Shown here one piece after another: positions 1 to 26,063 of a DNA stretch of 26,319 bases. The stretch is from Vitrella brassicaformis CCMP3155 (lineage: Eukaryota > Protista > Chromerida): assembly GCA_001179505.1 (NCBI GenBank), contig CDMY01000731.1, forward strand, positions 1 through 26,319, in the 5' to 3' direction. The notes below the pieces were generated by a model. The model ran no database searches, was not told the DNA's origin, and saw only the letters and a list, made by a program, of their open reading frames with translations. The number at the start of each line of letters is the position of its first letter. Within the stretch, counting starts at the first letter, position 1. Both the position numbers and the translations under genes were made by a program.

Positions 1-30
1 ACCACAGCCAGGCTCTCAGACATGGCCACA
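1..30 (-). other. Probable start of a third KS domain
   Basis: After the ACP and a short linker the frame reads PVAMSESLAVV, matching KS2 start MTNLAVMG and KS1 start EPIAIVG; only a few residues are visible. Confidence 0.6.
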
Positions 31-3000
31 GGCAACGGCCCACCCCACTCGTCCACAGCGCCCGCCTTGTCCGCCCCCCCGGAGACCTCATTGTAGATGA
101 AGCCAATGATGGCGTCGAGCGTCGGGTAGTCGAAGAGCGTGGTGGCGGGCAGCTTGACGCCGATCTTGGAGGACATGGCATTTCTGAACTCGACAGCGCC
201 AAGTGAGTCGATGCCCAGCTCTCGGAGGGGCGAGTCCAGAGGAGGCTCTTCAGTCATGCCAAGCACCGTCGCAGCCGTCTCCACGACTGCCTTGTGGATG
301 TGCTCTTTGAGGGCCGCCGCGTCCATGCTGCGCAGCTTGGCGGACACGCCTGCGGCCGCGCCTCCCGTGGCAGCCGACGCCACCGTCTCGAAGAAGGGCG
401 GGATGACGTCGTACTTGGAGAGGAAAGTGTGCCACACGAGGGCCTGACAGCACGTCACTCCAACACTATCAGAGTGCCGCATGACATCGCCCAGCACCCG
501 AAGGCCGAGCTCGTTGGTGATGCCGCGCACGCCGACTTTGTCCAAATATTGTGAGAGGTCGGCCGCCATGCCCTGTTCTGTCCACGGTCCCCACTGGATG
601 CTCTGGGCGGCGAGCTTATTGGATCGGCGGTACTCAGTCAGGGCGTCCAGACACGAGTTGGCCGCAGAGTAGTTGGACTGCCCCAAGTTGCCAAACAGAG
701 ATGCGACGGACGAGAACATCACAAAATGGTCGAGTGGAAGCTTCGTGTCGACCGACAGCTCATGGAGGTGCATCGCACCCATCACCTGAAAGCGAAGCAG
801 GAGCCAATGAATGTCTGAGTGCTTTGAGACGCGGTCAGCTAGCTGCTCTCACCTTTGGCAGGTAGACAGCCTCGATACGGTCCCTTGTCTGGTTGATTAC
901 TTCGGCGTCGTCGATGGCGCCGGCCGCGTGGAAGATGCCCTTTATTGGATGTGACGGCAGCCTGGCCCGCAGCTTGTCGAGCAGACCGGCAACCGCCTGC
1001 CTGTCTGACACGTCACACGGCATGCAGTGGACTTGCACGNNNNNNNNNNNNNNNNNNNNNNNNNNNNNNNNNNNNNNNNNNNNNNNNNNNNNNNNNNNNN
1101 NNNNNNNNNNNNNNNNNNNNNNNNNNNNNNNNNNNNNNNNNNNNNNNNNNNNNNNNNNNNNNNNNNNNNNNNNNNNNNNNNNNNNNNNNNNNNNNNNNNN
1201 NNNNNNNNNNNNNNNNNNNNNNNNNNNNNNNNNNNNNNNNNNNNNNNNNNNNNNNNNNNNNNNNNNNNNNNNNNNNNNNNNNNNNNNNNNNNNNNNNNNN
1301 NNNNNNNNNNNNNNNNNNNNNNNNNNNNNNNNNNNNNNNCAGCCGACGCCACCGTCTCGAAGAAGGGTGGGATGGCAATATACATCGACAGGAAGGTTTG
1401 CCACTTGACGAGTGCACAGCACGCCACCCCGACGCTCTCAGAGTGCCGCATGACATCGCCGAGCACCCGAAGGCCGAGCTCGTTGGTGATGCCGCTCATG
1501 CCGACTTTGTCCAAATATTGTGAGAGGTCGGCCGCCATGCCCTGTTCTGTCCACGGTCCCCACTGGATGCTCTGGGCGGCGAGCTTATTGGATCGGCGGT
1601 ACTCAGTCAGGGCGTCCAGACACGAGTTGGCCGCAGAGTAGTTGGACTGCCCCAAGTTGCCAAACAGAGATGCGACGGACGAGAACATCACAAAATGGTC
1701 GAGTGGAAGCTTCGTGTCGACCGACAGCTCATGGAGATGCATCGCACCCATCACCTGAAAGCGAAGCAGGAGCCAATGAATGTCTGAGTGCTTTGAGACG
1801 CGGTCAGCTAGCTGCTCTCACCTTTGGCAGGTAGACAGCCTCGATACGGTCCCTTGTCTGGTTGATTACTTTGGCGTCGTCGATGGCACCGGCCGCGTGG
1901 AAGATGCCCTTTATTGGATGTGACGGCAGCTTGGCCCGCAGCTTGTCGAGCAGACCGGCAACCGCCTGCCTGTCTGACACGTCACACGGCATGCAGTGGA
2001 CTTGCACGTTGGTCTTGCGGTGCGGCACGGGCGCCGTCAGCTTCTGCCAGATGGCCGATGTCTCGATGGAGGGCGAGGGCTTGCCGCGACGGGACAGCAA
2101 CACAATGTGCTTTGCGCCTTCATCCACCAGCCAGTCTGCGACGAGCAGTCCAAGTCCGCCGAGCCCCCCTGTGATGACATAGCATCCGTCAGTTTGGCGG
2201 TCGGCCGGTGTCGCCTCGTCGCGCTGTGTGTCGCCTGTGTGGGGCGGCGTGATGGCGCTCGGTATTTGTATGACGACTTTGCCGATGTGCTGGGCCCTCT
2301 GCATGAACCTGAAGGCCGCGATGCCGCCGGTGACTTGGTCGGCGCTGCTCATGTCGAATGTGTGCAGAGGGATGGGCTTGACCTTGCCAACATCGACTAG
2401 GCCCCGGAGGCGGTCGAGCATGCCGCCGAACCACTTGGGATCTTGCTCCATCATCTGGTCGATGGCCATCGCCTCGTACATGGCCAAGTCGGGCCGCTTG
2501 GCCAGCACCTCCTCTTTGCTCCAGATGCCGCGCTTGCCCAGCTCCATGAAGCGGCCCTTGGGCGCCATCGCGTCGAGCGACAAGGGAATGAAGTCCTCGA
2601 TGAGGCAGTTGAGCACCACGTCGACCTTGCTGTTGGCCTGCTGCGTGTCGGCCTGGAACTGGTTGGCGTCGCGCGAGCTCGTGACGAGCTGCAGGCCCTG
2701 CTGTCGCAGGAAGTCCTGTTTGTGCTGGCTGCCCGCCGTGCCGAACACGTCAGCGCCAATGCTTCTGCAGTACTGGATGGCCGCGAGCCCCACGCCGCCG
2801 CTGGCCGCGTGCACGAGGACGTTGTCTCCCTTGGTGACCTTGGCAAGCTCTCCAAAGGCGACCTCGACCGTCACAAAGACGACTGGCAGGGCGGCCGCCT
2901 CTTCCAAGGTCATGGATGCGGGCTTGATGGCCATCAGGTTGGCCTCCGTCGTCACGTAGGTCCGCAGGCAACCGGGCGCCACGCCGTAGACGTCATCGCC

Positions 3001-6000
3001 CACACTCAGGTGACTCACGCCCTCCCCAACGCCAACCACCGTCCCCGAGCAGTCGCCGCCCGGCGGACCGGGGTCGCCAGGATACAATCCCATCACATTC
3101 AACACGTCACGGAAATTCAGACCAATCGCACGAACACGGACCTCGACATAGTTGGAGCCGGCAGCCATGGCGTCGACTCGCAGCTCCTGTGACTGTGGCC
3201 GCAGCGTCAGGTTGGAGATTGCCCCCCTCTCGCTCATGTTGAGCTCGATCGGCCCCCTCACAGCAATCTTGTCGCGTGCCAGCCGTGCAACATACTGCTC
3301 TCCTCCCCGCACGGCAATCTCGCTCTCCAGTGGCTGTTCCTCTTGCCTCGACACGACACTGACGATAGCGTCCGCAAGTGCCCGCGGGTTCTTGTGGTCG
3401 ACCGGCATGTCCAGGTCGAGGCAGCCGATGCGTCCGCTGGCCTCGCCCTTCTCCATGCCGATCTCCAGCCGTGCGGTCTTGGCGAATCCCACCACACCGG
3501 CGTGCACAGGGGGGCCGAGGAATGCCTCGTCCTCGAGCACCTTGAGAGTCTTGGGCGTCACGGCCCACACAACGGGTGCCTTGGTGTCTTTGAGGACCAG
3601 CAGGGCTTGGCAGATGTCGAGCAGGCCGGACATGACATCCACTGCACTGCCAGTCGTCTCCATGGGCGCGAGGTACACGAGGCTGCCAAACTCCCTCTCC
3701 TTGAGCAGCGACACAACCTTGTCTCGCGAGTCGGCCACCACACCAGTGCTNNNNNNNNNNNNNNNNNNNNNNNNNNNNNNNNNNNNNNNNNNNNNNNNNN
3801 NNNNNNNNNNNNNNNNNNNNNNNNNNNNNNNNNNNNNNNNNNNNNNNNNNNNNNNNNNNNNNNNNNNNNNNNNNNNNNNNNNNNNNNNNNNNNNNNNNNN
3901 NNNNNNNNNNNNNNNNNNNNNNNNNNNNNNNNNNNNNNNNNNNNNNNNNNNNNNNNNNNNNNNNNNNNNNNNNNNNNNNNNNNNNNNNNNNNNNNNNNNN
4001 NNNNNNNNNNNNNNNNNNNNNNNNNNNNNNNNNNNNNNNNNNNNNNNNNNTGGAACCCACTGTCGACCAGGCCCCGGATGCGGTCGAGCATGCCGCCGAA
4101 CCACTTGGGATCTTGCTCTATCATCTGGTCGATGGCCATCGCCTCGTACATGGCCAAGTCGGGCCGCCTGGCCAGCACCTCCTCTTTGCTCCAGATGCCG
4201 CGCTTGCCCAGCTCCATGAAGCGGCCGTTGGGCGCCATCGCGTCGAGCGAGAAGGGAATGAAGTCCTCGATCAGGCAGTTGAGCACCACGTCGACCTTGC
4301 TGTTGGCCTGCTGCATGTCGGCCTGGAACTGGCTGGCGTCGCGCGAGCTCGTGACGAGCTGCAGGCCCTGCTGTCGTAGGAAGTCCTGTTTGTGCTGGCT
4401 GCCCGCCGTGCCATAGACATTGGCCCCGACGGCCCTGCAGTACTGGATGGCCGCGAGCCCCACGCCGCCGCTGGCCGCGTGCACGAGGACGTTGTCTCCC
4501 TTGGTGACGTTGGCGAGCTCTCGGAAGGCCACCTCGACCGTCACAAAGACGACCGGCAGGGCGGCCGCCTCTTCGAAGGTCATCGATGCGGGCTTGATGG
4601 CCATCAGGTTGGCCTCCGTCGTCACGTAGGTCCGCAGGCAACCGGGGGCCACGCCGTAGACGTCATCGCCCACACTCAGGTGACTCACGCCCTCGCCCAC
4701 GCCAACCACCGTCCCCGAGCAGTCGCCCCCCGGCGGACCGGGGTCGCCAGGATACAACCCCATCACATTCAACACGTCACGGAAATTCAGACCAACAGCA
4801 CGAACACGAACCTCGACATAGTTGGAGCCGGCAGCCATGGCGTCGACTCGCAGCTCCTGTGACTGTGGCCGCAGCGTCAGGTTGGAGATTGCCCCCCTCT
4901 CGCTCATGTCGAGCTCGATCGGCCCCCTCACAGCAATCTTGTCGCGTGCCAGCCGTGCAACATGCTGCTCTCCTCCCCGCACGGCGATCTCGCTCTCGAG
5001 TGGCTGTTCCTCTTGCCTCGACACGACACTGACGACAGCGTCCGCAAGTGCCCGCGGGTTCTTGTGGTCGACCGGCATGTCCAGGTCGATGCAGCCGATG
5101 CGTCCGCTGGCCTCGCCCTTCTCCATGCCGATCTCCAGCCGTGCGGTCTTGGCGAATCCCACCACACCGGCGTGCACAGGGGGGCCGAGGAATACCTCGT
5201 CCTTGAGCACCTTGAGAGTCTTGGGCGTCACGGCCCACACGACGGGTGCCTTGGTGTCTTTGAGGACCAGCAGGGCTTGGCAGATGTCGAGCAGGCCGGA
5301 CATGACATCCACTGCACTGCCAGTCGTCTCCATGGGCGCGAGGTACACGAGGCTGCCAAACTCCCTCTCCTTGAGCAGCGACACAACCTTGTCTCGCGAG
5401 TCGGCCACCACACCAGTGCTGCCTTCGACCTCAATTGCCTTGGCCACAGCCTCGGCAAAGGTAGCATTGCTGGCCACCACCAGGACCGGTTTTGTCTGGA
5501 CGGGTGGCGCGTCCGCATCTGGCTCGGCCCGCTTGTCCCACTCTGCCTTCCACATGAGCTCGCGAGGGATGTCCACCCCCGATGCAAGCTCGATCTTGCG
5601 AAGAGAGAGCTCCGTAATGTCGGCCACCTTGATGAGGGGCGTCTGGCCCGACGATGCTGCATCGCCTGCAAGTGCTGCGTCCGCCTTGACCTGGTAGATG
5701 GTGACGTTGGCCTTGGCGGTGGCCCCCTCCCTCGCCACGAGCGTCACGTGGGCCCAGCAGTCCTTGAACTGCATCTTCGTGAGGGTCGCCTGATGTGCTC
5801 CGACAGGGACCATCGGCTGGAGCTTGATGCCGCGGCTGGGCGATGCAGCGGGGCTGTTGGCGGTGAGACTCGAGCCCGACGTGCCCCTAATGGGCTCGCG
5901 GGGGCTCATTGACTTGAGCTGCCGGGGGTCGGGGTGGAGCAAGACCGCGATGGACTGGAAGGCACCGTCGAGGATGGCGGGATGGGTGAGAAAGCCGTCC

Positions 6001-9000
6001 TCATACCCCTCTCTGTCAGCCAGGGAGAGCTTCGCCNNNNNNNNNNNNNNNNNNNNNNNNNNNNNNNNNNNNNNNNNNNNNNNNNNNNNNNNNNNNNNNN
6101 NNNNNNNNNNNNNNNNNNNNNNNNNNNNNNNNNNNNNNNNNNNNNNNNNNNNNNNNNNNNNNNNNNNNNNNNNNNNNNNNNNNNNNNNNNNNNNNNNNNN
6201 NNNNNNNNNNNNNNNNNNNNNNNNNNNNNNNNNNNNNNNNNNNNNNNNNNNNNNNNNNNNNNNNNNNNNNNNNNNNNNNNNNNNNNNNNNNNNNNNNNNN
6301 NNNNNNNNNNNNNNNNNNNNNNNNNNNNNNNNNNNNGGCGAATCCCACCACACCGGCGTGCACAGGGGGGCCGAGGAATGCCTCGTCCTCGAGCACCTTG
6401 AGAGTCTTGGGCGTCACGGCCCACACAACGGGTGCCTTGGTGTCTTTGAGGACCAGCAGGGCTTGGCAGATGTCGAGCAGGCCGGACATGACATCCACTG
6501 CACTGCCAGTCGTCTCCATGGGCGCGAGGTACACGAGGCTGCCAAACTCCCTCTCCTTGAGCAGCGACACAACCCTGTCTCGCGAGTCGGCCACCACACC
6601 AGTGCTGCCTTCGACCTCAATTGCCTTGGCCACAGCCTCGGCAAAGGCAGCATTGCTGGCCGCCACCAGGACCGGTTTGGTCTGGACGGGTGGCGCGTCC
6701 GCATCTGGCTCGGCCCGCTTGTCCCACTCTGCCTTCCACATGAGCTCGCGAGGGATGTCCACCCCCGACGCAAGCTCGATCTTGCGAAGAGAGAGCTCCG
6801 TGATGTCGGCCACCTTGATGAGGGGCGTCTGGCCCGACGATGCTGCATCGCCTGCAAGTCCTGCGTCCGCCTTGACCTGGTAGATGGTGACGTTGGCCTT
6901 GGCGGTGGCCCCCTCCCTCGCCACGAGCGTCACGTGGGCCCAGCAGTCCTTGAACTGCATCTTCGTGAGGGTCGCCTGATGTGCTCCGACAGGGACCATC
7001 GGCTGGAGCTTGATGCCGCGGCTGGGCGATGCAGCGGGGCTGTTGGCGGTGAGACTCGAGCCCGACGTGCCCCTAATGGGCTCGCGGGGGCCCATTGACT
7101 TGAGCTGCCGGGGGTCGGGGTGGAGCAAGACCGCGATGGACTGGAAGGCACCGTCGAGGATGGCGGGATGGGTGAGAAAGCCGTCCTCATACCCCTCTCT
7201 GTCAGCCAGGGAGAGCTTCGCCAGCACCTCGTTATGGCCACTGTAGAGCTCAGATACAGTCCTGAACCGTGTGCCGTAGTTGAGACCGAGGCAACTGAGC
7301 TCGCGGTAGAATGCCGGCGTCGACAGCTCGAGGGGACAGCGGTTGCTGAGCGTCTCGAGTGTCTCGCCATTGGCATCCATAGGCTGGCCCGCCACCCTGA
7401 CACGAGCTGACGCATGGGAGCTCTCGTCGCCTTGTGGTTGATCGCCCTCCATCAGACGGCTGCAGATCTCTGCCGAGCCGCCGGGCTCGAGGCGAGCCGT
7501 CACCTGAATGGCCTGCGCACCGATGAACATGGGCTGCTCGATAGCCACATCCTCCAGCAACACAACCGTCCCACTCCACATGCGTGCGGGGTGCTCGGGG
7601 GAGGCGGCCAGGCTGGCCAGCATGTCGACAAAGCCCGCTCCGGGCATCAGGCACTGGTTGGACACGACGTGGTCGAGGAACAGCTTCTTGACATCGCGTC
7701 GGAGGGGGTAGCGGCATAGCACCCCGCCGTGTGCCTCGGTGCTCTTTTGGCCCAGGACAGGGTGCTGCACGGGCACCCACGGGAAACGACGGTGCTTCCA
7801 CTCGGGCTTCTTGGCGTGCATGCTCTCAAGCACAGGCATCGTCGACGTGCTTGCCTCCACCAGAATATGTGCGTTGGCCCCACCGAAGCCAAACGAGCTG
7901 ACGCCGCCGACCACCTGCTTCTGGCCGGTGCGGCCGGCGAAGTCGACAGCCGCTGTCTCGTACTGGAAGGGCAAGCCCTCGCTGTCAATGTGGGGGTTGA
8001 GCTCCGTGAAGTGCAGGTTGGGCGCCGCCTTGCCATGGATCAGGGTCATCACAAGCTTGATGAACCCAGAGATGCCCGCGGATCCCTCCAAGTGGCCGAT
8101 ATTGGTCTTGAGAGCGCCCAGCACAAGAGGATTGCTGTCACTGCGGCCAGGGCCGAACACAGCCTTCAGGGCGCCGAACTCGATGGGGTCGCCGAGAGAA
8201 GTGCCCGTGCCGTGGGTCTCGATGTACGACACGGCCGAAGGCTTCAGGCCGGCCATGGCGAGGGCGCCACGGAGGACCTCTTGCTGAGCTGGGCCGTTGG
8301 GGGCCGTCAGGCTGGCGCTTGTGCCATCATGGTTGACGGACGAGCCGAGGACGGTGGCCAGCGGCCGGTCGTTCTCAGTCAGCTGCCCTGTGGCCAGCAG
8401 GAATGCCGCGCCGGCACCCTCACCCCTCACATAGCCGTTGGCCTTGGCGTCGAAGGACTTGCATCGACAGTCGGGTGACAGCATTCGTGCCTTGGAGAAG
8501 GCAACGAACAGGTGGGGCGACATCATCAGATTCACACCGCCCACAATGGCGCCCTTGCAGAGGCCGAGACGCGTATTCTTGACGGCGGCGTCCATGGCAA
8601 CGAGTGAGGACGAGCACGCCGTGTCGATGGTCATGGACGGACCTCTGAGGCCGAAGGCGTACGAGATTCTGTTTGACATGAGGCTCATGGCTCCTCCAGT
8701 GCCCGAGTAGCTGCTGCTCTTGTATGACTCGATCCCCTGTGTCTTCTGGTCGAGATCGACGAAGTTCCAATCTCCATTGCAGCAGCCGATGAAGCATCCG
8801 TATGCCTTGCCCATGAGCTGGTCCTTGCGGATATCGGCCGAGTAGACGGCCTCGTAAGCGACCTCGACGATGAGGCGCTGCTGGGGGTCCATGCTCCACA
8901 CCTCCATTGGCTTGATGGTGAAGAAGTTGTGGTCGAACAGGTCGCCGTTGCTGATAAACCCGCCCTGCGTCGAGTAGGTCTTGCCGCCCTCGTCAGGGTC

Positions 9001-12000
9001 GGCCGAGTAGAACTCGATGTAGTCCCACCGTGTCAGCGGCGTGTCCACCATGCAGTCCGTCTTGTCCATGAGCATCTCCCAGAACTTAGCAGGCGTGTTG
9101 CTGTTGCCCGGCAGCCGGCAGGACATCCCCATGACCGCCAGATTCGTCATGTTGGCGTCAGCCGACAGCGGCAGGTTCTGCATGGCCAGCTGAGTCTCGT
9201 CGGCGGTCTCGCTGTCCGATCCCGACAGCTCCCTCTCAATGAAGTCAATGATGGCCGACAGAGTGGGGTAGTCGAACATGGTTGTCGCTGGCAGCTTGAC
9301 GCCCAGTTTGGTGGACAGCACATTGCGGAACTCCACAGCACCCAGTGAGTCGACGCCGAGGGCCTGCAGGGGCTGGTCCACGGGGGGAGGCTCGTTGGTA
9401 CCCAAGACGTTGGCGCAGGCATCAATGACGGTCTTGGAGATGAACTCGCGGCGCTTCTCCGGTGACATGCCCATAAGATGAGCTGATGCGCCGGCGATGC
9501 CGCTGCCGCCCACCTCGATGCGGCTGAAGAAGTTGGGCACGCGGTTGTATCGGTCGAGGAACTTGCGCCACACGAGGGCCTGGCAGCACGTCACCCCGAC
9601 GCTCTCAGAGTGCCGCATGACATCGCCGAGCACACGAAGGCCNNNNNNNNNNNNNNNNNNNNNNNNNNNNNNNNNNNNNNNNNNNNNNNNNNNNNNNNNN
9701 NNNNNNNNNNNNNNNNNNNNNNNNNNNNNNNNNNNNNNNNNNNNNNNNNNNNNNNNNNNNNNNNNNNNNNNNNNNNNNNNNNNNNNNNNNNNNNNNNNNN
9801 NNNNNNNNNNNNNNNNNNNNNNNNNNNNNNNNNNNNNNNNNNNNNNNNNNNNNNNNNNNNNNNNNNNNNNNNNNNNNNNNNNNNNNNNNNNNNNNNNNNN
9901 NNNNNNNNNNNNNNNNNNNNNNNNNNNNNNNNNNNNNNNNNNGCCATGGATCAGGGTCATCACAAGCTTGATGAACCCAGAGATGCCCGCGGATCCCTCC
10001 AAGTGGCCGATATTGGTCTTGAGTGCACCCAGCACAAGAGGATTGTTGTCACTGCGGCCAGGGCCGAACACAGCCTTGAGAGCGCCGAACTCGATGGGGT
10101 CGCCGAGAGAAGTGCCCGTGCCGTGGGTCTCGATGTACGACACGGCCGAAGGTTTGAGGCCGGCCATGGCGAGGGCGCCACGGAGGACCTCTTGCTGAGC
10201 TGGGCCGTTGGGGGCCGTCAGGCTGGCGCTTGTGCCATCATGGTTGACGGACGAGCCGAGGACCGTGGCCAGCGGCCGGTCGTTCTCAGTCAGCTGACTT
10301 GTGGCCAGCAGGAATGCCGCGCCGGCACCCTCACCCCTCACATAGCCGTTGGCCTTGGCGTCGAAGGTCTTGCATCGACAGTCGGGTGACAGCATTCGTG
10401 CCTTGGAGAAGGCAATGAACAGGTGGGGCGACATCATCAGATTCACACCGCCCACAATGGCGCCCTTGCAGAGGCCGAGACGCGTGTTCTTGACGGCGGC
10501 GTCCATGGCAACGAGTGAGGACGAGCACGCCGTGTCGATGGTCATGGACGGACCTCTGAGGCCGAAGACGTACGAGATTCTGTTTGACATGAGGCTCATG
10601 GCTCCTCCAGTGCTCGAGTAGCTGCTGCTCTTGTATGCGTCGATCCCCTGTGTCTTCTGGTGGAGATCGACGAAGTTCCAATCTGCATTGCAGCAGCCGA
10701 TGAAGCATCCGTATGCCTTGCCCATGAGCTGGTCCTTGCGGATGTCGGCCGAGTAGACGGCCTCGTAGGCGACCTCGGCGATGAGGCGCTGCTGGGGGTC
10801 CATGCTCCACACCTCCATTGGCTTGATGGTGAAGAAGTTGTGGTCGAACAGGTCGCCGTTGCTGATAAACCCGCCCTGCGTCGAGTAGGTCTTGCCGCCC
10901 TCGTCCGGGTCGGCCGAGTAGAACTCGATGTAGTCCCACCGTGTCAGCGGCGTGTCCACCATGCAGTCCGTCTTGTCCATGAGCATCTCCCAGAACTCAG
11001 CAGGCGTGTTGCTGTTGCCCGGCAGCCGGCAGGACATCCCCATGACCGCCAGATTCGTCATGTTGGCGTCAGCCGAAAGTGGCAGGTTCTGCATGGCCAG
11101 CTGAGCCTCGTCGGCGGTCTCGCTGTCCGATCCCGACAGCTCCCTCTCGATGAAGTCAATGATGGCCGACAGAGTGGGGTAGTCGAACATGGTTGTCGCT
11201 GGCAGCTTGACGCCCAGTTTGGTGGACAGCACATTGCGGAACTCCACAGCGCCCAGTGAGTCGACGCCGAGGGCCTGCAAGGGCTGGTCCACGGGGGGAG
11301 GCTCGTTGGTACCCAAGACGTTGGCGCAGGCATCGATGACGGTCTTGGAGATGAACTCGCGGCGCTTCTCGGGTGACATGCCCTTAAGATGAGCTGATGC
11401 GCCGGCGATACCGCTGCCGCCCACCTCGATGCGGCTGAAGAAGTTGGGCACGCGGTTGTATCGGTCGAGAAACTTGCGCCACACGAGGGCCTGGCAGCAC
11501 GTCACCCCGACGCTCTCAGAGTGCCGCATGACGTCGCCGAGGACGCGAAGGCCGAGCTCGTTGGTGATGCCGCGCATGCCGACCTTGTCCAAATATTGTG
11601 AGAGGTCGGCCGCCATGCCCTGCTCTGTCCACGGTCCCCACTGGATGCTCTGGGCGGCAAGCTTCTTAGATCGGCGGTACTCAGTCAGGGCATCTAGACA
11701 CGAGTTGGCCGCAGAGTAGTTGGACTGCCCCAAGTTGCCAAACAGAGATGCGACGGACGAGAACATCACAAAATGGTCCAGCTCCATGTGGCGCGCCATA
11801 GTGAGATCGTGCAGATTCATAGCGCCTTGCACCTAACAGACAACAGACAACAAGACACAACAAGTGTATCCGACTATCAAGATCCTTGCGTGTTTCCTCT
11901 TCATCCACTCTTGTACCTTTGGCAAGTAGACTTTGGTGATGCTCTCCTTGGTCTGCTTGCTCATGACCGAATCGTCCAGCACACCAGCGGCGTGCAAGAT

Positions 12001-15000
12001 ACCGAGCAGGGGATGCCTATCCGAGAACACACTCTCCACGTCCCCGAGCAGCCTCTCGCACTCCTGCTTGCTCGACACGTCACAGGCGAAACACCGCACC
12101 GTCGCTGATGTCTTGCCTTGTGGGGCGGGGGCAGTGAGCCTTTTCCACACAGCCGAGTTCTTCGTCTCGTCGGTCGGCTGCCCTCTGCGTGACACCAGGG
12201 CAATGTGTTTCGCCCCCTCATCGACCAACCAGTTCGCCACGAGCAGCCCCAGGCCACCGAGCCCTCCAGTGATGAGATAGACACCATCAGACTTGTTGGT
12301 TGTGGCAGCGACATGAGGCTCGAGGAAGGGCGATCGCAATGCCGATGGGATCTGGATGACGACCTTGCCGATGTGCTGGGCACGCTGCATGAACCTGAAG
12401 GCCGCGATGCCTCCGACCTTGGTATCGCTGCTGAGGAGGTTGAACACATGCAAGGGAATGGCTTTGATCTTGCCGTCATACACCAAGCGCCGCACGCGAT
12501 CAAGCATCCCGCCAAACCACTTGGGATCTTCCTCCATCATGTGGTCGACGGCGATGGTCTCATACATGATGTCGGGCCTCTCCTTGCTCATCTCGTCCTC
12601 GGTCCAGATGCCACGCTTGCCGAGCTCCATGAAGCGGCCGTTCGGTGCCATCAGGTCGACTGAGTTGGGGATGAAGTCTTCGATAAGACAGTTGAGGACG
12701 ACATCGATCTTGGCGTCTCCGCCGAGGAAGCCCGTCATCTCTGTCTTGAAGACATTTGCGNNNNNNNNNNNNNNNNNNNNNNNNNNNNNNNNNNNNNNNN
12801 NNNNNNNNNNNNNNNNNNNNNNNNNNNNNNNNNNNNNNNNNNNNNNNNNNNNNNNNNNNNNNNNNNNNNNNNNNNNNNNNNNNNNNNNNNNNNNNNNNNN
12901 NNNNNNNNNNNNNNNNNNNNNNNNNNNNNNNNNNNNNNNNNNNNNNNNNNNNNNNNNNNNNNNNNNNNNNNNNNNNNNNNNNNNNNNNNNNNNNNNNNNN
13001 NNNNNNNNNNNNNNNNNNNNNNNNNNNNNNNNNNNNNNNNNNNNNNNNNNNNNNNNNNNNCATCCACTCTTGTACCTTTGGCAAGTAGACTTTGGTGATG
13101 CTCTCCTTGGTCTGCTTGCTCATGACCGAATCGTCCAGCACACCAGCGGCGTGCAAGATACCGAGCAGGGGATACTTATCCGAGGACACACTCTCCACGT
13201 CCTCGAGCAGCCTCTCGCACTCCCGCTTGCTCGACACGTCACAGGCGAAACACCGCACCGTCGCTGATGTCTTGCCTTGTGGGGCGGGGGCAGTGAGCCT
13301 CTTCCACAGAGCCGAGTTCTTCGTCTCGTCGGTCGGCTGCCCTCTGCGTGACACCAGGGCAATGTATTTCGCCCCCTCATCGACCAGCCAGTTCGCCACG
13401 AGCAGCCCCAGGCCACCGAGCCCTCCAGTGATGAGATAGACACCATCAGACTTGTTAGTTGTGGCAGCGACATGAGGCTCGAGGAAGGGCGATCGCAATG
13501 CGGATGGGATCTGGATGACGACCTTGCCGATGTGCTGGGCACGCTGCATGAACCTGAAGGCCGCGATGCCTCCGACCTTGGTATCGCTGCTGAGGAGGTT
13601 GAACACATGCAAGGGAATGGCTTTGATCTTGCCGTCATACACCAAGCGCCGCACGCGATCGAGCATCCCACCAAACCACTTGGGATTTTCCTCCATCATG
13701 TGGTCGACGGCGATGGTCTCATACATGATGTCGGGCCTCTCCTTGCTCATCTCGTCCTCGGTCCAGATGCCACGCTTGCCGAGCTCCATGAAGCGGCCGT
13801 TCGGTGCCATCAGGTCGACTGAGTTGGGGATGAAGTCTTCGATAAGACAGTTGAGGACGACATCGATCTTGGCGTCTCCGCCGAGGAAGCCCGTCATCTC
13901 TGTCTTGAAGACATTTGCGTCACGGGAACTGGTGACGTAATGAACACCCTGCTGTCGTAGGAAGTCTTGTTTGTGCTGGCTGCCCGCCGTGCCGTAGAAA
14001 TTGGCCCCGACGGCCCTGCAGTACTGGATGGCCGCGAACCCCACGCCGCCCGATGCCGCGTGCACGAGGACGTTGTCTCCCTTGGTGACCTTGGCGAGCT
14101 CTCGGAAGGCCACCTCGACGGTGACAAAGACGGTCGGCAGGGCGGCCGCCTCTTCGAAGGTCATCGATGCGGGCTTGATGGCCATCAGGTTGGCCTCCGT
14201 CGTCACGTAGGTCCGCAGGCAACCGGGGGCCACGCCGTAGACGTCATCTCCCACACACAGATGACTCACGCCCTCCCCAACGCCCACAACCGTCCCCGAG
14301 CAGTCGCCGCCCGGCGGGCCGGGGTCGCCCGGATACAGACCCATCACGTTCAACACGTCACGGAAATTCAGACCTATCGCACGAACACGGACCTCCACGA
14401 GGTCGTTTGTCGGGGGCACTCTGGCGTCGTCTGAAAGGGGCCGTAGCTTGAGGTTTGAGATGGCGCCACGTGAGCTCATGTGCAGCTCGGCCGCGCCCCT
14501 GGTCTCTAGTTTGCCGTATGCGAGTCGGCTAACGGACGTGGGCCCGCTGCGGATGACCACCTCGGGCTCAACGTCGCCCTTCTCGGCAATGAAGTCCAGG
14601 AGGTGCTTGATCTGGTCCTCGACGAAAGGCTTGTCCGACACTTCAGCAACTCCGACCATCAGGTCTCGGACGCCCAGCATCTCGTTCTCGACACGTGCTG
14701 TGCGGGCGAAACCCCACACGCCCGAGTGTGGCGACATGTTTGTTGGCGGCGGGCCGCTCTTGTCGACCGAGTGGATGCCCGTCGTGAGCACCCAGATGCG
14801 GATGGTCTTTGCGCCGCTCGAGGCCTTGCAGATCTCAGCGCTGTTGACGCAAAGCTGCCGCAGCCCGTCCAGAGCGTTGATGGGGTCGGCGGTCGAGTCG
14901 AGTGACGTCGCGTAGAAGATGTACATGATGTTGCTGCCCTCCATAGCGCTCTCCAGGTCCGCGACGTCGGGCACACTGGCCTTCCGGATGACGTTGAGTG

Positions 15001-18000
15001 TCTTGACGGCCTCCGTGAGGCTGGATGCGGTCCACTTCATGACGCTTTCGTTGGGGCAGACGACGATCGTGCGCATGCCGTTGAAGATGTCCTCCTTCTT
15101 TGGCACGTTGGGGTCCTCGATACGCTCCCGCTCTTCTCCCTCCTCGTCGACCAGCTTGAGCTTCTTCCACTGGTCGTCCGACACCCAGTCCACCGTCCAG
15201 ATCAGGTCACGCGGGATCTCTGCCTGCGGCGTGAAGTCAACCTGCTTGAGTGTCACGTGCTCCAGCTTCCCCACGGCCTTGCCCGACTCTTCGAAGAGGG
15301 TCACGTCGATCATGGCAGTGCTGCTCTCGCTGTTCACCAAAGCCACGACGGCCCACAGAGGCGTCCCGGGGGCCACGCGGCTGAGTGTGACCTCGTCGAT
15401 GGCGATGGGCACCATGGCGGTCTTGGCCGCTCTGGCGCCACTGCCGCCAGCACCCAGTAGCACAGCGGCCACCTGCAGGGCGCCGTCCAGCAGACATGGG
15501 TTGAGGTGGAATGCGGAATCGAATGCCGACGAGGGCGGATGCTTGAGCTTGCCGAGTGCCAGAATGCCGTTGGCTGCCACACTAACTGACACGAGCGTCT
15601 GGAATGCGGGGCCGTAGGTGAGGCCGCGGGAGTGCAGGTGCTGGTAGAGCTCCTTGACGTCGAAGCTGGTGGTGCACGCCTCCTGGGCCTCCTTCAGACC
15701 GCCCTCAGCTACCTGGAGGGCCTTACACGAGCTGGCCGTCGACAGCCGAGCGGTCGCGTGGACCGTCTCCTCTTGGCCTTCAGACTGGCCGTTTACCGTG
15801 GCGATGGTTGCCTCCCGGCCCTTGACGGTGCACTTGAGCTGCGGTGCGCTGCCTGTCTCGGTGAAGACCTTCATGGGCCGGTCGAAGGCAACCTGCTGAA
15901 CGAACACGGGCTGGCTGGGGCTTGCGTTGCTCACTGTCGATGTCCAGAGCGCACCGAACAAATCCACATAGCCCGCACCGGGCATCACAACAACACTGAA
16001 ACACAAAATCATTAAGTTGGTCCAAGGAGTATGCGCCTTCGATCCTCTGGTTTCTCTCTTTTTCTGTGCTTGCTTACCCAGTAACGACATGGTCTGCGAA
16101 GAGCTGCTGCACGTCCTTGCGCAGCTGTGTCTGGAACACCACAGATCGGTCAGCCCCGATGCTCTGTTTGCCGATGAGGGGGTGGCTGACTTCCTTCCAC
16201 GGGAACGGCTCCCTGTTCTCGAACAGCCCCTCAGGCTGTGGCGCCAGCTTGACCTCGATCTCCTGCAACACTGCTGACACCGTCGACAGCTCGCTCTTGC
16301 CCGGTTCAAGGACCGCCAGCCAGTTGAGGCTGTCCGAGGAGCCGAGGCTGTCGCGACCCACACACTGCTTGCCGAGGTTGATGAGCGTCGGGCGGGGGCC
16401 CACCTCCACGAGGATACTGCAGCCCTCGGCGACGGTGGCCGTGATGCCGTCCATGAAGCGGACTGGCAGCGTGATGTGGCTGGCCCAGAAGTGACTGGTA
16501 AGGACCTCGTCGCCGGCCACCTTGCCACTCACGTTGGACACGAAGGGAATGGAGGGCTTGTGCAGCTTAACCGAATCGAGCACCTCACGGAAGGGCTGCA
16601 CGGTGTCCTCCATCAGCGGAGAGTGGAAGGCATGCGACACCGCCAGCAGACGATAGCTCTTGTCAGCATTCAGAGCTCTCATCACCAAGCCAACCTCGCT
16701 GCGAGTCCCGGACACCACCACACTCTTGGGGCCGTTGACGGCCGCCACAGAGACGGTCCTGGTCTGATCCTCGCCGACGGATGCGATGCCCTTGAGCACC
16801 TCCTCCTCGCTCAGACGACAGGCGGCCATGACGCCATCATTCTGTGGAGCGTCGTTCATGATTCGTGCTCGTTCCGCGATGAGCCTGAGTCCGTCCTCGA
16901 GGCTCATGACGCTAGCGACGGTGGCGGCCACGTACTCGCCGATGCTGTGGCCCATGACCACATCGGGCGTCACACCACGGCTCCGCAAAAGCTGAACCAA
17001 CGAATACTCGACAGCGAAGATCAGTGGCTGCGAGAACCGAGTCTGGTCGACGAGCTTCTGCATCTTCTGGCGCTCCTCCTGGTCGTCGCCTGGGAAGAGG
17101 ACGTCGAGAGCCTTGATGGGCGCCAGATAGCGGTCAAGGATGCCGATACATTGGTCGAGGCTCTGCTGGAACACCTTGTCGTTCTCGTACAGCTCCTTGC
17201 CCATGTCCAGGTGCTGCGAACCCTGGCCTGTGAACAGAAAAGCCACTTTCTTCTTCTCGGCCTTGACGGGCACATTGGCCGCCTCGGTGGACTTGGTCGC
17301 CGGAGACCTGTCCACCGCGGGCGCCTCCTCGAGAATGACGTGGGCATTGGCGCCACCAAATCCGAAGGAGCTCACACCGGCGAGGAGCCGCCGGCCAGGG
17401 GGCGGTATGAGTGGGAGGGTCTCAGTGGGGAAGGCGACGGGGAGGCCCTCGATGTCGACGTGCGGATTCAGGGAGCTGAAGCGGAGATTGGGGGGCGTCT
17501 GCTTCATCTGCAGTACGAGCACAGCCTTGAGCACACCCGCAATACCCGCCGCTCCCTCCAAGTGGCCCATGTTGGTCTTGAGGGCGCCCAGCACGAGAGG
17601 GTGCTCCGACTCCCGCCCTCCCGCAAACACGGCCTTGAGCGCGCCCACCTCGATCGGGTCACCGAGGGACGTACCCGTGCCGTGCGTCTCGATAAAGTCG
17701 ATTGCTGATGGTTGGAGGCCGGCCTGGCGCAGCGCCGACCTGATGACCTGCTGCTGGGCCGGCCCGCTGGGGGCTGTCAGGCTGGCTGCCCTCCCCCCGT
17801 GGTTGACGGCCGTGCCTCTCAGGCAGGCCAACACGCCCACCGACTCGGCGGATGTGTCGGAAAGTCGCTTGAGGATGATGGCGGCCGCTCCCTCACCACG
17901 AACATAGCCGTTGGCCGACGTATCGAATGCCTTGCATCGGGCGTCGGGAGCGATCATGCGCGCCTTGCAGAACCCCACCGTAACTTGCGGGTTGAGCATC

Positions 18001-21000
18001 AGGTTGATGCCGGCCCCCACACACGTGCTGCACACGCCTCGTCGGAGGTTGGAGACGGCGATGTCGAGGGCCACGAGTGAGGATGAGCATGCCGTGTCGA
18101 CCGTCATGGATGGCCCCTGGAGGCCGAGAATGTAGGAGATGCGGTTGCTGAGGATAGATGCGGCGGCCCCGCTGGTGCTGTAGCTGCTCACGCTGAGGGC
18201 CGTTTGGTTCTGCACGTGGTGCCAGTCAAAGGAGCAGCAGCCGACGAAAACGCCGATCTGGCTGCGCATGAGCGTCTGCCGTGAGTAGCCAGCGCTGTGG
18301 AATGCCTCGTAGCTGACCTCCAGCATGATGCGCTGCTGGGGGTCCATGGTCTTGGCCTCTGCGGGGCCGATTTTGAAGAAGGCGGCGGCGAACATCTCTG
18401 CGTTGTCAATGAAGCCCCCCTCCCGGATGTACATTTTGCCCTCCATGTCGGGGTCCCCATCGTAGTGCTCGTCGACGTTCCAGCGGGTCAGCGGCACNNN
18501 NNNNNNNNNNNNNNNNNNNNNNNNNNNNNNNNNNNNNNNNNNNNNNNNNNNNNNNNNNNNNNNNNNNNNNNNNNNNNNNNNNNNNNNNNNNNNNNNNNNN
18601 NNNNNNNNNNNNNNNNNNNNNNNNNNNNNNNNNNNNNNNNNNNNNNNNNNNNNNNNNNNNNNNNNNNNNNNNNNNNNNNNNNNNNNNNNNNNNNNNNNNN
18701 NNNNNNNNNNNNNNNNNNNNNNNNNNNNNNNNNNNNNNNNNNNNNNNNNNNNNNNNNNNNNNNNNNNNNNNNNNNNNNNNNNNNNNNNNNNNNNNNNTGG
18801 TTGGAGGCCGGCCTGGCGCAGCGCCGACCTGATGACCTGCTGCTGGGCCGGCCCGCTGGGGGCTGTCAGGCTGGCTGCCCTCCCCCCGTGGTTGACGGCC
18901 GTGCCTCTCAGGCAAGCCAACACGCCCACCGAGTCGGCGGATGTGTCGGAAAGTCGCTTGAGGATTATGGCGGCCCCACCCTCACCACGAACATAGCCGT
19001 TGGCCGACGTATCGAATGCCTTGCATCGGGCGTCGGGAGCCATCATGCGCGCCTTGCAGAACGCCACCGTAACTTGCGGGTTGAGCATCAGGTTGATGCC
19101 GGCCCCCACACACGTGCTGCACACGCCTCGTCGGAGGTTGGAGACGGCGGTGTCGAGGGCCACGAGTGAGGATGAGCATGCCGTGTCGACCGTCATGGAT
19201 GGCCCCTGGAGGCCGAGAATGTAGGAGATGCGGTTGCTGAGGATAGATGCGGCGGCCCCGCTGGTGCTGTAGCTGCTCACGCTGAGGGCCGTTTGGTTCT
19301 GCACGTGGTGCCAGTCAAAGGAGCAGCAGCCGACGAAAACGCCGATCTGGCTGCGCATGAGCGTCTGCCGTGAGTAGCCAGCGCTGTGGAATGCCTCGTA
19401 GCTGACCTCCAGCATGATGCGCTGCTGGGGGTCCATGGTCTTGGCCTCTGCGGGGCCGATTTTGAAGAAGGCGGCGGCGAACATCTCTGCGTTGTCAATG
19501 AAGCCCCCCTCCCGGATGTACATTTTGCCCTCCATGTCGGGGTCCCCATCGTAGTGCTCGTCGACGTTCCAGCGGGTCAGCGGCACCTCCACTATCGCAT
19601 CGCCGCCGGTGCTCAACAGCTCCCACAGCGACTCCAGCGACGAGCTGCCGCCCGGCAGACGGCACGCCGCACCCACGATGGCGATGGGCTCGTCTGCCCT
19701 GATGCCGCCCACCAGTTTGCCGCCCTCTTGTGCGGCCTCCTCAGCAGCGGCGTGGCCCTCCAGCTCGCCGACGAGGAAGTTGATGATGTCATTCGTCGTT
19801 GGGTAATTGAAAATGAGCGTTGGCTCGATGTGCAGCGACAGCGTCTGGGACACGTTCTCGGCAAACTCCACTGCACCGATGGAGTCGACACCCAGCTCGT
19901 GCAGAGGCGCGTCGAAGTCGAATGTGTCGGTGTTGCCCAGGATCTTGGCCGCCGACGCCAATACTGCTGACTGGACCATCTCCCTCCTCTGTCCGATGAA
20001 GAGGCCCTGGCCCGTTGCCTCCTCCTGTGTCGCAACGGAGCCGCCAGACGGCCTCGTCCGAGCAGCTGGGGAATCATCATTGTCTCCTCCTGCGGCACAC
20101 TCGGCTACTGACGCCTCGTTGGTGGGTAGGTGAGCTGCTGCGGCCTGCTCCTCGTTGTCCGTGTCGGGCTCAGCCACAACCTCATCCCAGATGAGGCCCG
20201 CCAGCACCATGTTGAGGAGGAGCTCACGCGTCTTGAACCGACGAACTTTGCCTGACGAGAGGCAGCGACAGAAGCCAAGGACAACAACGCTTGAATCTGA
20301 CATTGTCTATCGGCATATGTGTACGTCAAATAGACGTACCTGCTGTTGTCTTTGGGATGGTTCTTGGTTCGAGCAGCCATATGTGGAAGACGGGAATCCC
20401 CACCTTGGCCGAGACGGCCTTGCATATCTCGCGGCCGACTTGCCTGTATTGAGCCCCTTTACTGGTGAACGCCTGCCACAGCCCCGAGAGCCATCCCAAC
20501 GTCCCCGTCCCCTTCTCCATCTTGATCTCGACCGCCAGACCCAGCCGCTCGTGATCATCCACCTCCAGTGAGAACGCCGCCACGCACCCCTTGCGGACTG
20601 ATTCGCAGCCCTCTGCTGCCTCCTCGATGTCTTGGGGGAAGTAGTTGCGGCCCCGGACGATGATCATGTCCTTGATGCGGCCGGCGATGAAGAGTTCTCC
20701 CTTGTAGAGGAAGCCGCTGTCACCTGTGCGGAGGTATAAGGGCTCCGACTTGTCCCCCGTGCGGTAGATGCACTGCCCGTGGAACGACTCCCGCGTCTTG
20801 TCGGGAAGGTTGAAGTAGCCACGGGCCGTGCTGCCAGACATGACCCACACCTCGCCGCGACGGCCCTCTGGCAGCTCCTTCAGAGTCTCGGGATCAACAA
20901 TTCGAACTGAACGAAGCAGTCGGTGATCGACCGGCGTTGGTCATGGTGCGGTGTGTGTGTGTACCGTCTATCCCAGGGAAGGGCACGCCACATCCGACGA

Positions 21001-25644: not shown

Positions 25645-25684
25645 AGACAGACAGACAGACACACAGACAGACAGACAGACAGAC
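25645..25684. repeat. (AGAC)n microsatellite: 4 units + ACAC + 5 units
   Basis: Read directly from the sequence. Confidence 0.95.
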
Positions 25685-25999
25685 ACTGGCGCGCTTCAAT
25701 GAGGTGCTTCTCTCGTCAGCGAGCCGTCACAAGCGTGCGTCACCTGCAATCCAATCCTCACACACATGCAAGAAATGTGCGCATCGCATGCAATGCACCT
25801 AGCTATCCTATTGTCAATAGACGAGGGTAGTAGCAAGTAGGCACGATCCGATCCAGCCAGTGAGTTTCATAGACATACGAGTGCGTCCAGAAGATACACT
25901 CTCTCAGGCGACGCCACGGCCGCCACGATCGAATATATGCGGGGCCCACGTACCCTTTATCTATGTACACATACTTTTTTACAAGGGGGGACCAACCAG

Positions 26000-26041: not shown

Positions 26042-26063
26042 GAAAAACACAACTGACAAAGAT

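What the first reader, a model, noticed from the sequence alone, without database searches (positions are those of the whole stretch)
7770..7855. AT-less elongation module inside a FAAL-primed eukaryotic megasynthase (hybrid cis/trans-AT assembly line)
KS2 ends at ANAHILVEA and only about 30 residues later DH2 begins (HPVLG), in gap-free sequence. No AT is present, and neither is the ~100-aa flanking subdomain typical of bacterial trans-AT PKS. The post-AT linker remnant survives (W.HRRFPW vs FENREPFPW in module 1), so the AT looks cleanly excised as a cassette. KS2, DH2, ER2, KR2 and ACP2 all keep catalytic residues, so ACP2 must be malonylated some other way. Options are the module-1 AT acting in trans, a stand-alone AT elsewhere, or ACP self-acylation. 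AT-deficient modules and self-acylating ACPs are, to my recollection, reported for Toxoplasma PKS2. This is the most interesting system in the window.
Basis: partly seen in the sequence, partly recalled or inferred. Interest (0 to 1): 0.8.

Follow-up and report, generated by a model that had tools for sequence, protein, structure and literature searches.

The report
AT-less module in Vitrella fatty-acid megasynthase
The second module of this giant fatty-acid/polyketide-type synthase gene, from the alga Vitrella or a close relative, really does lack its own acyltransferase, but such modules recur in the related synthases of chromerid algae and apicomplexan parasites and are already described, so this is a clean example, not a new kind of enzyme.

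Summary
On the minus strand, KS2 ends at 7852-7854. DH2 (HPVLG) starts at 7762-7764. Only 29 residues lie between them, in an uninterrupted ORF (6337-9642). The window holds one AT (16317-17246).

Contigs from four independent studies cover the junction without a gap, joint or insertion. One is a 2284-nt contig lying on 6337-8230. The missing AT is therefore not an assembly deletion.

The gene is an apicomplexan/chromerid FAS-I-type megasynthase. Its layout is FAAL-ACP-[KS-AT-DH-ER-KR-ACP]-[KS-DH-ER-KR-ACP]-KS3... It carries introns and is closest to Vitrella and Chromera proteins.

The same AT-less junction of roughly 28-38 residues, ending in W-x-[RH]-[KR]-x-F-P-W before HPLLG, occurs in Chromera Cvel_19857 (twice) and a Cystoisospora FAS-I; Cvel_6161 has the same motif after a longer spacer. 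Even AT-containing modules of this family have only 17-35 residues between KS and AT. That explains why there is no flanking subdomain.

In a KS tree, AT-less and AT-bearing KSs interleave within species clades, which points to repeated recent AT loss.

AT-poor algal and chromerid synthases are already published (Shelest 2015; Tomčala 2020). This scan has also found the same thing on two other pieces of this genome. How ACP2 is malonylated remains untested.

Separately, six of the seven 300-N gaps are flanked by falsely duplicated sequence.

The parts
20338..22732 (-). Loading acyl ligase (FAAL-type), in several exons: about 22732-22457, 22118-21630, 21526-21125 (with an internal intron) and 20907-20338. 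A 300-N gap (22130-22429) lies inside it.
   Evidence: tblastn with the Blabericola N-terminus. NCBIfam best hits are fatty-acid--AMP ligase families. Motifs FLQFTSGST at 21963-21989, YGLAENT at 21197-21217 and GRIKDMI at 20662-20682.
19773..19967 (-). ACP0 of the loading didomain (DSI serine motif at 19863-19895).
   Evidence: Pfam PP-binding.
17325..19691 (-). KS1. It is interrupted by a 300-N gap (18498-18797) flanked by a false duplication (17709-18497 matches 18798-19586 at 99%).
   Evidence: Pfam ketoacyl-synt reported twice; self-blastn; motifs.
16317..17246 (-). AT1, the only acyltransferase in the window. It has FTGQGSQ, GHSIGE and the malonyl-type HAFHS motif. Only about 28 residues separate it from KS1.
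   Evidence: Pfam Acyl_transf_1, E=5.7e-51; tblastn.
11104..16217 (-). Rest of module 1: post-AT linker (EPFPW 16197-16211), DH1 (HPLIG 16170-16184; intron after DHVVTG, about 16076-15995), ER1, KR1 (intron after YLPKV) and ACP1. It contains the gap 12761-13060 with its flanking duplicate.
9193..9420 (-). ACP1, the copy on the contig that carries the junction (DSL at 9328-9360).
7852..9135 (-). KS2, with the Cys-His-His catalytic residues intact.
   Evidence: Pfam; motifs; AF2 model matches the KS fold of CurL and DEBS at rmsd 2.0-2.5.
7765..7851 (-). KS2-to-DH2 linker of 29 residues. It is a short spacer plus the W-K-H-R-R-F-P-W end of the former post-AT linker. No AT and no flanking subdomain.
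   Evidence: In the AF2 model this span has no secondary-structure elements beyond a 4-residue helix; pLDDT is about 52 for the first 10 residues and about 82 for the rest. Independent contigs bridge it.
6763..7764 (-). DH2, with HPVLG, the active-site His in H-x3-N-x4-P (7633-7674) and the Asp in HPAILDGAFQ (7141-7170).
   Evidence: Pfam PKS_DH_N and PS-DH.
1807..3750 (-). Structural KR region, ER2 (HAASGGVG at 2788-2811) and the N-terminal half of KR2 (ITGGLGGLG at 2149-2175, YLPKV at 1819-1833), followed by an intron.
   Evidence: Pfam ADH_N, ADH_zinc_N and KR.
3..788 (-). C-terminal half of KR2 (NYSAAN at 657-674), ACP2 (DSL at 186-218) and the first residues of KS3 (SESLAV at 3-20). The gene runs off the window here.
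   Evidence: Pfam KR and PP-binding.
4051..6036 (-). Redundant contig. It is an allelic or recent-paralogue copy spanning the join between contigs 1340-3750 and 6337-9642, and is not an extra module.
   Evidence: Self-blastn: 4063-5420 matches 2393-3750 (96.5%), 5151-6036 matches 6337-7222 (98.8%), 3481-3750 matches 6337-6606 (99.6%).

Best explanation
Shown: this is the 5' part of an intron-containing gene for an apicomplexan/chromerid type I fatty-acid-synthase-like megasynthase, from Vitrella brassicaformis or a very close relative. The order is FAAL-type acyl ligase, ACP0, module 1 (KS-AT-DH-ER-KR-ACP), module 2 (KS-DH-ER-KR-ACP), then KS3 and onwards. Module 2 descends from a cis-AT module. 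An in-frame deletion removed the AT together with most of its post-AT linker. What remains is a spacer of about 10 residues plus the KS-docking end of the post-AT linker (W-x-H-R-R-F-P-W), fused to DH2. In this family the AT-bearing modules already have only 17-35 residues between KS and AT, so the deletion leaves no flanking subdomain. The same loss has happened repeatedly in related synthases. Inferred: module 2 is an active, fully reducing C2-elongation module. ACP2 most likely receives malonyl from an AT integrated elsewhere in the same homodimeric megasynthase, either AT1 or an AT further downstream, acting across modules. All modules of such a FAS-like line use malonyl-CoA, and ACP1 and ACP2 present nearly the same recognition helix. 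I put the anatomy and evolutionary reading at about 0.9, and the shared-integrated-AT step at about 0.5.
For: Junction and motifs. Single AT in the window. Independent support: a 2284-nt contig of run X1 lies on 6337-8230 with 9 differences and no gap. Sediment-metagenome unitigs (7518-7800, 7771-7944, 7915-8101) chain across the junction. Depth is continuous in all four runs, which come from four different studies, and no joint or insertion is listed near the junction. Homologues share the architecture: Chromera Cvel_19857 has KS-28-DH twice and then KS-AT-DH; a Cystoisospora FAS-I has KS-34-DH in its third module; Cvel_6161 and Blabericola are also mixed. A conserved W-[DEK]-[RH]-[KR]-x-F-P-W motif precedes HPLLG in the AT-less linkers. 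KS-to-AT distance is 17-35 residues in the family, against 110-133 in Nostoc and Streptomyces. In the KS tree, window KS2 is sister (100/99) to the AT-bearing KS of Vitrella Vbra_425; Chromera's AT-less KS1 and KS2 are sister to its AT-bearing KS3; bacterial KSs form a separate clade (97/98). ACP1 and ACP2 share LG[VI]DSLGAVEFRN...KLPATT.FDYPTL. dN/dS is 0.19 between the two copies of the ACP1-KS2 region. The AF2 model (pLDDT 86, pTM 0.86) shows no domain between KS and DH. The FAAL-type loader is confirmed. Every family member examined that is not cut at both ends keeps at least one AT.
Against: No biochemical or expression evidence was obtained here. None of the runs that hold the stretch is recorded as RNA. 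One metagenomic relative (P0274, cut at both ends) shows five modules with no AT, so an external AT or self-loading is possible in this family. Self-acylating ACPs are reported for Toxoplasma TgPKS2. DH2 has Asn in place of the usual Gly in H-x3-G-x4-P. The window ends at KS3, so the total numbers of modules and ATs are unknown. The assembly around this gene is poor (false duplications at six gaps), and module counts elsewhere in it could be wrong.
Confidence: 0.8

Rival explanations
1. A free-standing cytosolic acyltransferase encoded elsewhere in the genome loads ACP2, which would be true trans-AT logic as proposed for most algal multimodular PKSs.
For: Shelest et al. 2015 (PMC4661987) infer in-trans ATs for almost all of about 30 algal non-iterative PKSs. 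The metagenomic relative P0274 shows five modules without any AT.
Against: No AT other than AT1 lies in the 26-kb window. In the chromerid survey (PMC7464705), the passages read show only one stand-alone acyl transferase for Vitrella, and it is predicted to be plastid-targeted (FAS-II FabD). Family members keep at least one integrated AT. KS2 lacks the flanking subdomain of bacterial trans-AT modules.
Confidence: 0.25
2. ACP2 loads itself with malonyl from malonyl-CoA without any AT.
For: Three of the four ACPs of Toxoplasma TgPKS2 are reported to self-acylate (bioRxiv 10.1101/2023.05.23.541938). Toxoplasma is in the same wider lineage.
Against: TgPKS2 is a different synthase. No sequence determinant could be tested here. 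ACP1, which has its own AT, and ACP2 are nearly identical in helix II, so ACP2 shows nothing special. Retention of at least one AT per synthase argues that ATs are still needed.
Confidence: 0.12
3. Module 2 is inactive, skipped or non-elongating, so ACP2 need not be malonylated.
For: DH2 carries H-x3-N-x4-P instead of H-x3-G-x4-P. Non-elongating modules are known in bacterial trans-AT lines.
Against: The KS2 Cys-His-His residues, the ER2 NADPH motif, the KR2 Ser-Tyr-Asn residues and the ACP2 DSL motif are all intact. dN/dS is 0.19 for the ACP1-KS2 copies. The same N variant occurs in Chromera Cvel_6161. The architecture is conserved across genera.
Confidence: 0.07
4. The AT is missing only because of a mis-assembly, either a collapsed repeat or a deletion in this scaffold.
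For: The scaffold is badly assembled. Six of seven gaps carry false duplications, and both neighbouring redundant contigs stop within about 180-630 bp of the junction.
Against: Contigs from four other studies cover 7700-7900 collinearly, including one of 2284 nt. No joint or insertion is listed there, and the loose ends shown lie elsewhere, though 43 loose ends were not shown. Chromera and Cystoisospora proteins have junctions of 28-38 residues with the same motif. KS1 and KS2 are too diverged at the DNA level to be collapsed onto each other.
Confidence: 0.03

Closest known systems
Apicomplexan/chromerid multimodular type I FAS (Cryptosporidium CpFAS1 / Toxoplasma FAS-I type; Chromera Cvel_19857, listed as 'Type I FAS' in Tomčala et al. 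2020, PMC7464705)
   Same: It has an N-terminal acyl-ligase plus ACP loader and tandem fully reducing modules. Sequence identity to Cvel_19857 is 41-56%. The KS-to-AT linker is short. Cvel_19857 has the same AT-less KS-28-DH junction, with the same W..FPW motif.
   Different: The AT is retained in module 1 here, but in the last mapped module of Cvel_19857. The N-terminal half of Toxoplasma FAS-I has ATs in both of its modules. The C-terminal reductase cannot be seen because the gene leaves the window.
Algal multimodular type I PKSs with displaced AT domains (Shelest et al. 2015, PMC4661987)
   Same: It is a eukaryotic, multimodular, non-iterative synthase whose modules lack an integrated AT. 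The evolutionary scenario of AT loss from cis-AT ancestors combined with module duplication also fits.
   Different: This synthase is a mixed line that still carries an integrated AT. Its modules are fully reducing (FAS-like). It belongs to the alveolate clade, not to the chlorophyte or haptophyte clades.
Bacterial trans-AT PKS modules (for example bacillaene PksJ/L/N, or the Brevibacillus K3DAK4 bimodule 7zma/7zsk)
   Same: A KS is followed directly by DH with no AT. The post-AT-linker-like motif before the next domain is present.
   Different: Bacterial modules have a spacer or flanking subdomain of about 90-220 residues after the KS. Here there are 29 residues and no subdomain. KS2 lies outside the bacterial clade. 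No discrete AT gene is in view.
Toxoplasma gondii TgPKS2
   Same: It is a modular type I synthase from the same wider lineage, with unconventional extender loading (self-acylating ACP2-4; one catalytically dead AT).
   Different: TgPKS2 keeps an AT domain in each of its three modules (PMC9301873) and is not fully reducing. No self-acylation data exist for the ACPs described here.

Membership tests
Apicomplexan/chromerid type I FAS-like megasynthase | N-terminal acyl ligase (FAAL-type) plus ACP loading didomain | tested here: met
   tblastn with the Blabericola loader gives 43-45% identity over four exons. NCBIfam best hits are fatty-acid--AMP ligases. ACP0 is found by Pfam.
Apicomplexan/chromerid type I FAS-like megasynthase | Tandem fully reducing modules (KS, DH, ER, KR, ACP) | tested here: met
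   Pfam hits and motifs for both modules.
Apicomplexan/chromerid type I FAS-like megasynthase | KS domains group with chromerid/apicomplexan KSs, apart from bacterial PKS KSs | tested here: met
   KS2 is sister to the Vitrella Vbra_425 KS (100/99) inside a 13-row chromerid/apicomplexan group (88/69). The bacterial clade is separate (97/98). KS1 is unresolved but is not in the bacterial clade.
Apicomplexan/chromerid type I FAS-like megasynthase | An AT in every module ('complete modules', as FAS-I is defined in PMC7464705) | tested here: not met
   Module 2 has no AT. The same holds for Cvel_19857, which that paper lists as FAS-I.
Apicomplexan/chromerid type I FAS-like megasynthase | C-terminal thioester reductase release domain | not testable with these tools
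   The gene runs off the window at KS3.
Bacterial-type trans-AT PKS | Flanking subdomain (remnant KS-AT linker domain) after the KS | tested here: not met
   The linker is 29 residues. AF2 shows no structured element between KS and DH. Bacterial comparators have 93-221 residues.
Bacterial-type trans-AT PKS | KS falls in the trans-AT KS clade | tested here: not met
   KS tree.
Bacterial-type trans-AT PKS | Free-standing AT encoded with the synthase | tested here: inconclusive
   There is none in the 26-kb window. The rest of the genome could not be searched.
Algal multimodular PKS with AT displaced in trans (Shelest 2015) | Multimodular eukaryotic synthase whose modules lack an integrated AT | tested here: met
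   Met for module 2 only. Module 1 retains its AT.
Self-acylating ACP (TgPKS2 ACP2-4 type) | ACP loads acyl-CoA without an AT | not testable with these tools
   This is a biochemical property. Only the DSL motif and the similarity to ACP1 were seen.

The most novel reading that the evidence does not exclude
In this alveolate family, one integrated AT serves the ACPs of several modules of the same dimeric assembly line (same polypeptide, different module). That would be a third loading logic, distinct from cis-AT and from free-standing trans-AT. The family's minimal KS-AT linker would make AT cassettes freely excisable, which would explain the repeated, recent and seamless AT losses.
Probability: 0.45. 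Interest if true: 0.5.

Novelty: new member of a known kind. Interest (0 to 1): 0.3.

Why it matters
This is a well-verified natural example of a seamless AT excision from a cis-AT module, and the AT-bearing sister KS (Vitrella Vbra_425) and the parental-type module 1 are both available for comparison. That gives PKS engineers natural cut points, just after the KS and just before the W..FPW motif. It also provides a tractable system (AT1, ACP1, ACP2) for asking how AT-less modules in protist megasynthases are loaded, which has not been tested biochemically for the FAS-I type. It does not reveal a new enzyme class. A practical point: gene models here are inflated by false duplications at the gaps.

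Tried and rejected
1. Assembly deletion: rejected, using independent contigs and conserved homologue junctions.
2. AT hidden in another frame, an intron or elsewhere in the window: tblastn with AT1 finds only AT1.
3. Doubled KS and KR domains as real extra modules: rejected. The copies abut the N runs in register at 95.5-99% identity, so they are overlapping allelic or paralogous contigs.
4. My first guess of a haptophyte, based on GC content and sediment metagenomes: rejected. The best relatives are Vitrella (87-90% amino-acid identity to Vbra_425 over ER-KR-ACP) and Chromera.
5. Bacterial trans-AT membership: fails the linker and clade tests.
6. The protein searches were swamped by bacterial PKSs. 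The window's own giant gene model was not retrieved, probably because of the length limits.
7. Foldseek matched only single domains (TMq about 0.5), so it says nothing on the KS-DH arrangement.
8. No run is recorded as RNA, so expression and splicing were not shown here.
9. Upstream ORFs in 22.8-26.3 kb have no Pfam hits.
Full report
**What is in the sequence.** The window has seven runs of exactly 300 N. The gene lies on the minus strand.

In the frame that is open from 9642 down to 6337, the order is ACP1, then KS2, then a short linker, then DH2.
- ACP1 has its DSL motif at 9328-9360.
- KS2 has its Cys in DTACSSS (8590-8625), His in ETHGTGT (8200-8220) and His in KTNIGHLE (8086-8109). It ends at 7852-7854.
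- A 29-residue linker follows (7765-7851) and contains RRFPW (7777-7791).
- DH2 starts with HPVLG (7750-7764). Its catalytic His is in DHVVSNQCLMPGAG (7633-7674) and its Asp in HPAILDGAFQ (7141-7170).

Pfam finds KS, PKS_DH_N and PS-DH in this piece but no acyltransferase. A tblastn search of the whole window with AT1 finds only AT1 itself (16317-17246), with nothing else better than E=1.8.

**The whole gene.** Read exon by exon, the gene has these parts.
- A FAAL-type acyl ligase in several exons (22732-20338). This rests on tblastn with a gregarine homologue and on NCBIfam best hits to fatty-acid--AMP ligases.
- ACP0.
- Module 1: KS1, then about 28 residues, then AT1 (GHSIGE, HAFHS), then a post-AT linker ending EPFPW, then DH1 (with an intron after DHVVTG), ER1, KR1 (with an intron after YLPKV) and ACP1.
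- Module 2: KS2, DH2, ER2 (HAASGGVG), KR2 (GGLGGLG; an intron after YLPKV; NYSAAN) and ACP2 (DSL).
- The first residues of KS3 at the window edge.

All the catalytic motifs of module 2 are present. DH2 has Asn where H-x3-G-x4-P usually has Gly. A Chromera homologue shares this variant.

**Assembly quality.** Self-blastn shows that at six of the seven gaps, the block just before the gap repeats, in register, just after it:
- 371-1039 and 1340-2008 (95.5%)
- 2393-3750 and 4063-5420 (96.5%)
- 5151-6036 and 6337-7222 (98.8%)
- 8032-9642 and 9943-11553 (97.6%)
- 11902-12760 and 13061-13919 (98.4%)
- 17709-18497 and 18798-19586 (99.0%)

These are overlapping contigs of alleles or recent paralogues that the scaffolder placed in tandem. 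Contig 4051-6036 is wholly redundant. The KS2-DH2 junction lies in unique sequence (7223-8031) within one contig.

**Is the junction real?** The stretch is held by 20 public runs from 7 studies, including marine-sediment and microbial-mat metagenomes. I laid four runs from four different studies on 6337-9642.
- One 2284-nt contig lies on 6337-8230 with nine differences and no gap.
- Metagenome unitigs at 7518-7800, 7771-7944 and 7915-8101 chain across the linker.
- Depth is continuous in all four runs.
- No joint or insertion is listed near 7700-7900, and the loose ends shown lie elsewhere; 43 further loose ends were not shown.

None of the runs is recorded as RNA, so expression was not shown here.

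**Relatives.** An exhaustive protein search with KS2-DH2 ranks Chromera velia Cvel_19857 first. It is 6729 residues long and 49% identical. Query residues 1-631 align collinearly with protein residues 1911-2538, which means KS joined straight to DH there too (one search gives the names).

Domain mapping with the window's own domains gives these architectures:
- Cvel_19857: ACP-[KS-28-DH-ER-KR-ACP] twice, then [KS-AT-DH-ER-KR-ACP].
- Cvel_6161: one AT among four modules.
- A Cystoisospora suis 'type I fatty acid synthase': two AT-bearing modules, then KS-34-DH-ER-KR.
- The gregarine Blabericola: an AT-less first module behind the same ligase-ACP loader.
- The N-terminal half of Toxoplasma FAS-I: ligase-ACP followed by two AT-bearing modules.

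Vitrella protein CEL92229.1 (Vbra_425; ER-KR-ACP-KS-AT) is 87-90% identical to the window's ER2-KR2-ACP2. This places the window in Vitrella brassicaformis or a very near relative. Two earlier follow-ups of this scan on other pieces of the same genome say the same.

**Why there is no flanking subdomain.**
- In the alveolate family, KS-to-AT distances in AT-bearing modules are 17-35 residues. In Nostoc and Streptomyces modules from the same hit lists they are 110-133.
- AT-less KS-to-DH distances are 28-38 residues in the closest relatives. In bacterial KS-DH modules they are 93-221.
- The AT-less linkers share W-[DEK]-[RH]-[KR]-x-F-P-W followed by x3-HPLLG. This corresponds to the end of the post-AT linker (EPFPW in module 1; YPF..R.W in bacteria).
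- An AlphaFold2 model of KS2-linker-DH2, built on 19 sequences, has mean pLDDT 86 and pTM 0.86. It shows no structured element between KS and DH. The first ten linker residues are low-confidence, and the W..FPW stretch has pLDDT of about 82.
- Foldseek confirms the KS fold (rmsd 2.0-2.5 to CurL and DEBS KS) but gives no information on the arrangement of the domains.

**History of the loss.** In a maximum-likelihood KS tree of 47 sequences:
- Window KS2 is sister (100/99) to the AT-bearing KS of Vbra_425.
- Chromera's two AT-less KSs are sister to its AT-bearing KS3.
- Cvel_6161's AT-bearing KS is nested among its AT-less ones.
- All bacterial KSs, both cis-AT and trans-AT, form a separate clade (97/98).

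AT loss is therefore recurrent and recent within this lineage. It is not the mark of an old trans-AT clade.

Within the gene, the KR-C/ACP segments of modules 1 and 2 are 94-96% identical in DNA and the ER segments are 82-85% identical. KS1 and KS2 share no detectable DNA similarity.

**How it probably works.**
- Module 2 looks active. Its catalytic motifs are intact, and dN/dS is 0.19 between the two copies of ACP1-KS2 (the other copy pairs have too few differences to judge).
- All modules are fully reducing, so all need malonyl only.
- ACP1 and ACP2 are almost identical through the serine motif and helix II.
- Every family member that is not truncated at both ends keeps at least one AT.

I therefore favour malonylation of ACP2 by an integrated AT of the same dimeric synthase, either AT1 or one further downstream. 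This is an inference, at about 0.5. The alternatives are:
- A free-standing AT, at about 0.25. Shelest 2015 infers these for algal PKSs. One metagenomic relative, cut at both ends, shows five modules with no AT.
- ACP self-acylation, at about 0.12. It is reported for TgPKS2 ACP2-4.

**Comparison with the literature.**
- Shelest et al. 2015 (PMC4661987) describe the lack of integrated ATs as a striking feature of algal multimodular PKSs. They propose AT displacement combined with module duplication.
- Tomčala et al. 2020 (PMC7464705) catalogue the chromerid FAS-I/PKS genes and note incomplete modules that lack an AT.
- Woo et al. 2015 (PMC4501334) report multimodular FAS-I in both chromerids.
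- TgPKS2 has three AT domains, one of them inactive (PMC9301873), and self-acylating ACPs (bioRxiv 10.1101/2023.05.23.541938).

**Verdict.** The finding is a correct and well-documented instance of a known pattern. The modest additions made here are the conserved junction motif, the family-wide minimal KS-AT linker, and the tree evidence for repeated recent excision.

Noticed in passing
window 1040-1339, 3751-4050, 6037-6336, 9643-9942, 12761-13060, 18498-18797 and their flanks: Six of the seven 300-N gaps are flanked by in-register copies at 95.5-99% identity. These are false tandem duplications from overlapping allelic or paralogous contigs. Contig 4051-6036 is fully redundant. Gene models built on this scaffold would show spurious extra KS, ER and KR domains.
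   Followed up: yes
window 22130-22429: The seventh gap has no flanking duplicate and falls inside the acyl-ligase region. Roughly 50 residues of the ligase, relative to the Blabericola homologue, are missing there, so this one may be a true gap.
   Followed up: partly
window about 16076-15995, about 11913-11833 and about 1806-1750: An intron sits after the catalytic-Lys motif YLPKV in both KR1 and KR2, so its position is shared by the two modules. The intron that splits the DH1 active-site motif (DHVVTG | ..VVMPGAG) is absent from DH2.
   Followed up: partly
window 428-731 vs 11475-11778; 2261-3144 vs 13506-14395: Divergence between modules is mosaic. KR-C/ACP is 94-96% identical in DNA and ER is 82-85% identical, while KS1 and KS2 share no detectable DNA similarity. 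This suggests gene conversion confined to the reductive and carrier parts.
   Followed up: no
P0121 (Chromera Cvel_19857) and P0362 (Blabericola), C-terminal parts: The precomputed Pfam lists include a thioester-reductase-type NAD_binding_4 domain (in P0121 and P0362) and sulfotransferase families (PF13469 in both; PF00685 in P0362). This hints that products of this synthase family may be released by reduction and then sulfated. That part of the gene lies outside this window.
   Followed up: no
P0181 (XP_023973534.1, labelled Physeter catodon): A 3920-residue modular KS-AT-KR-ACP synthase with three identical KS copies is filed under sperm whale. It looks like protist or other contamination in that assembly, or an assembly artefact.
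   Followed up: no
window 7633-7674: The DH2 active-site motif reads H-x3-N-x4-P rather than H-x3-G-x4-P. The same Asn is present in the first module of Chromera Cvel_6161.
   Followed up: partly
window 22800-26319: The upstream 3.5 kb has no ORF with a Pfam hit. It carries short microsatellites: (AGAC)n at 25645-25685 and an AC-rich repeat at 26000-26041.
   Followed up: partly
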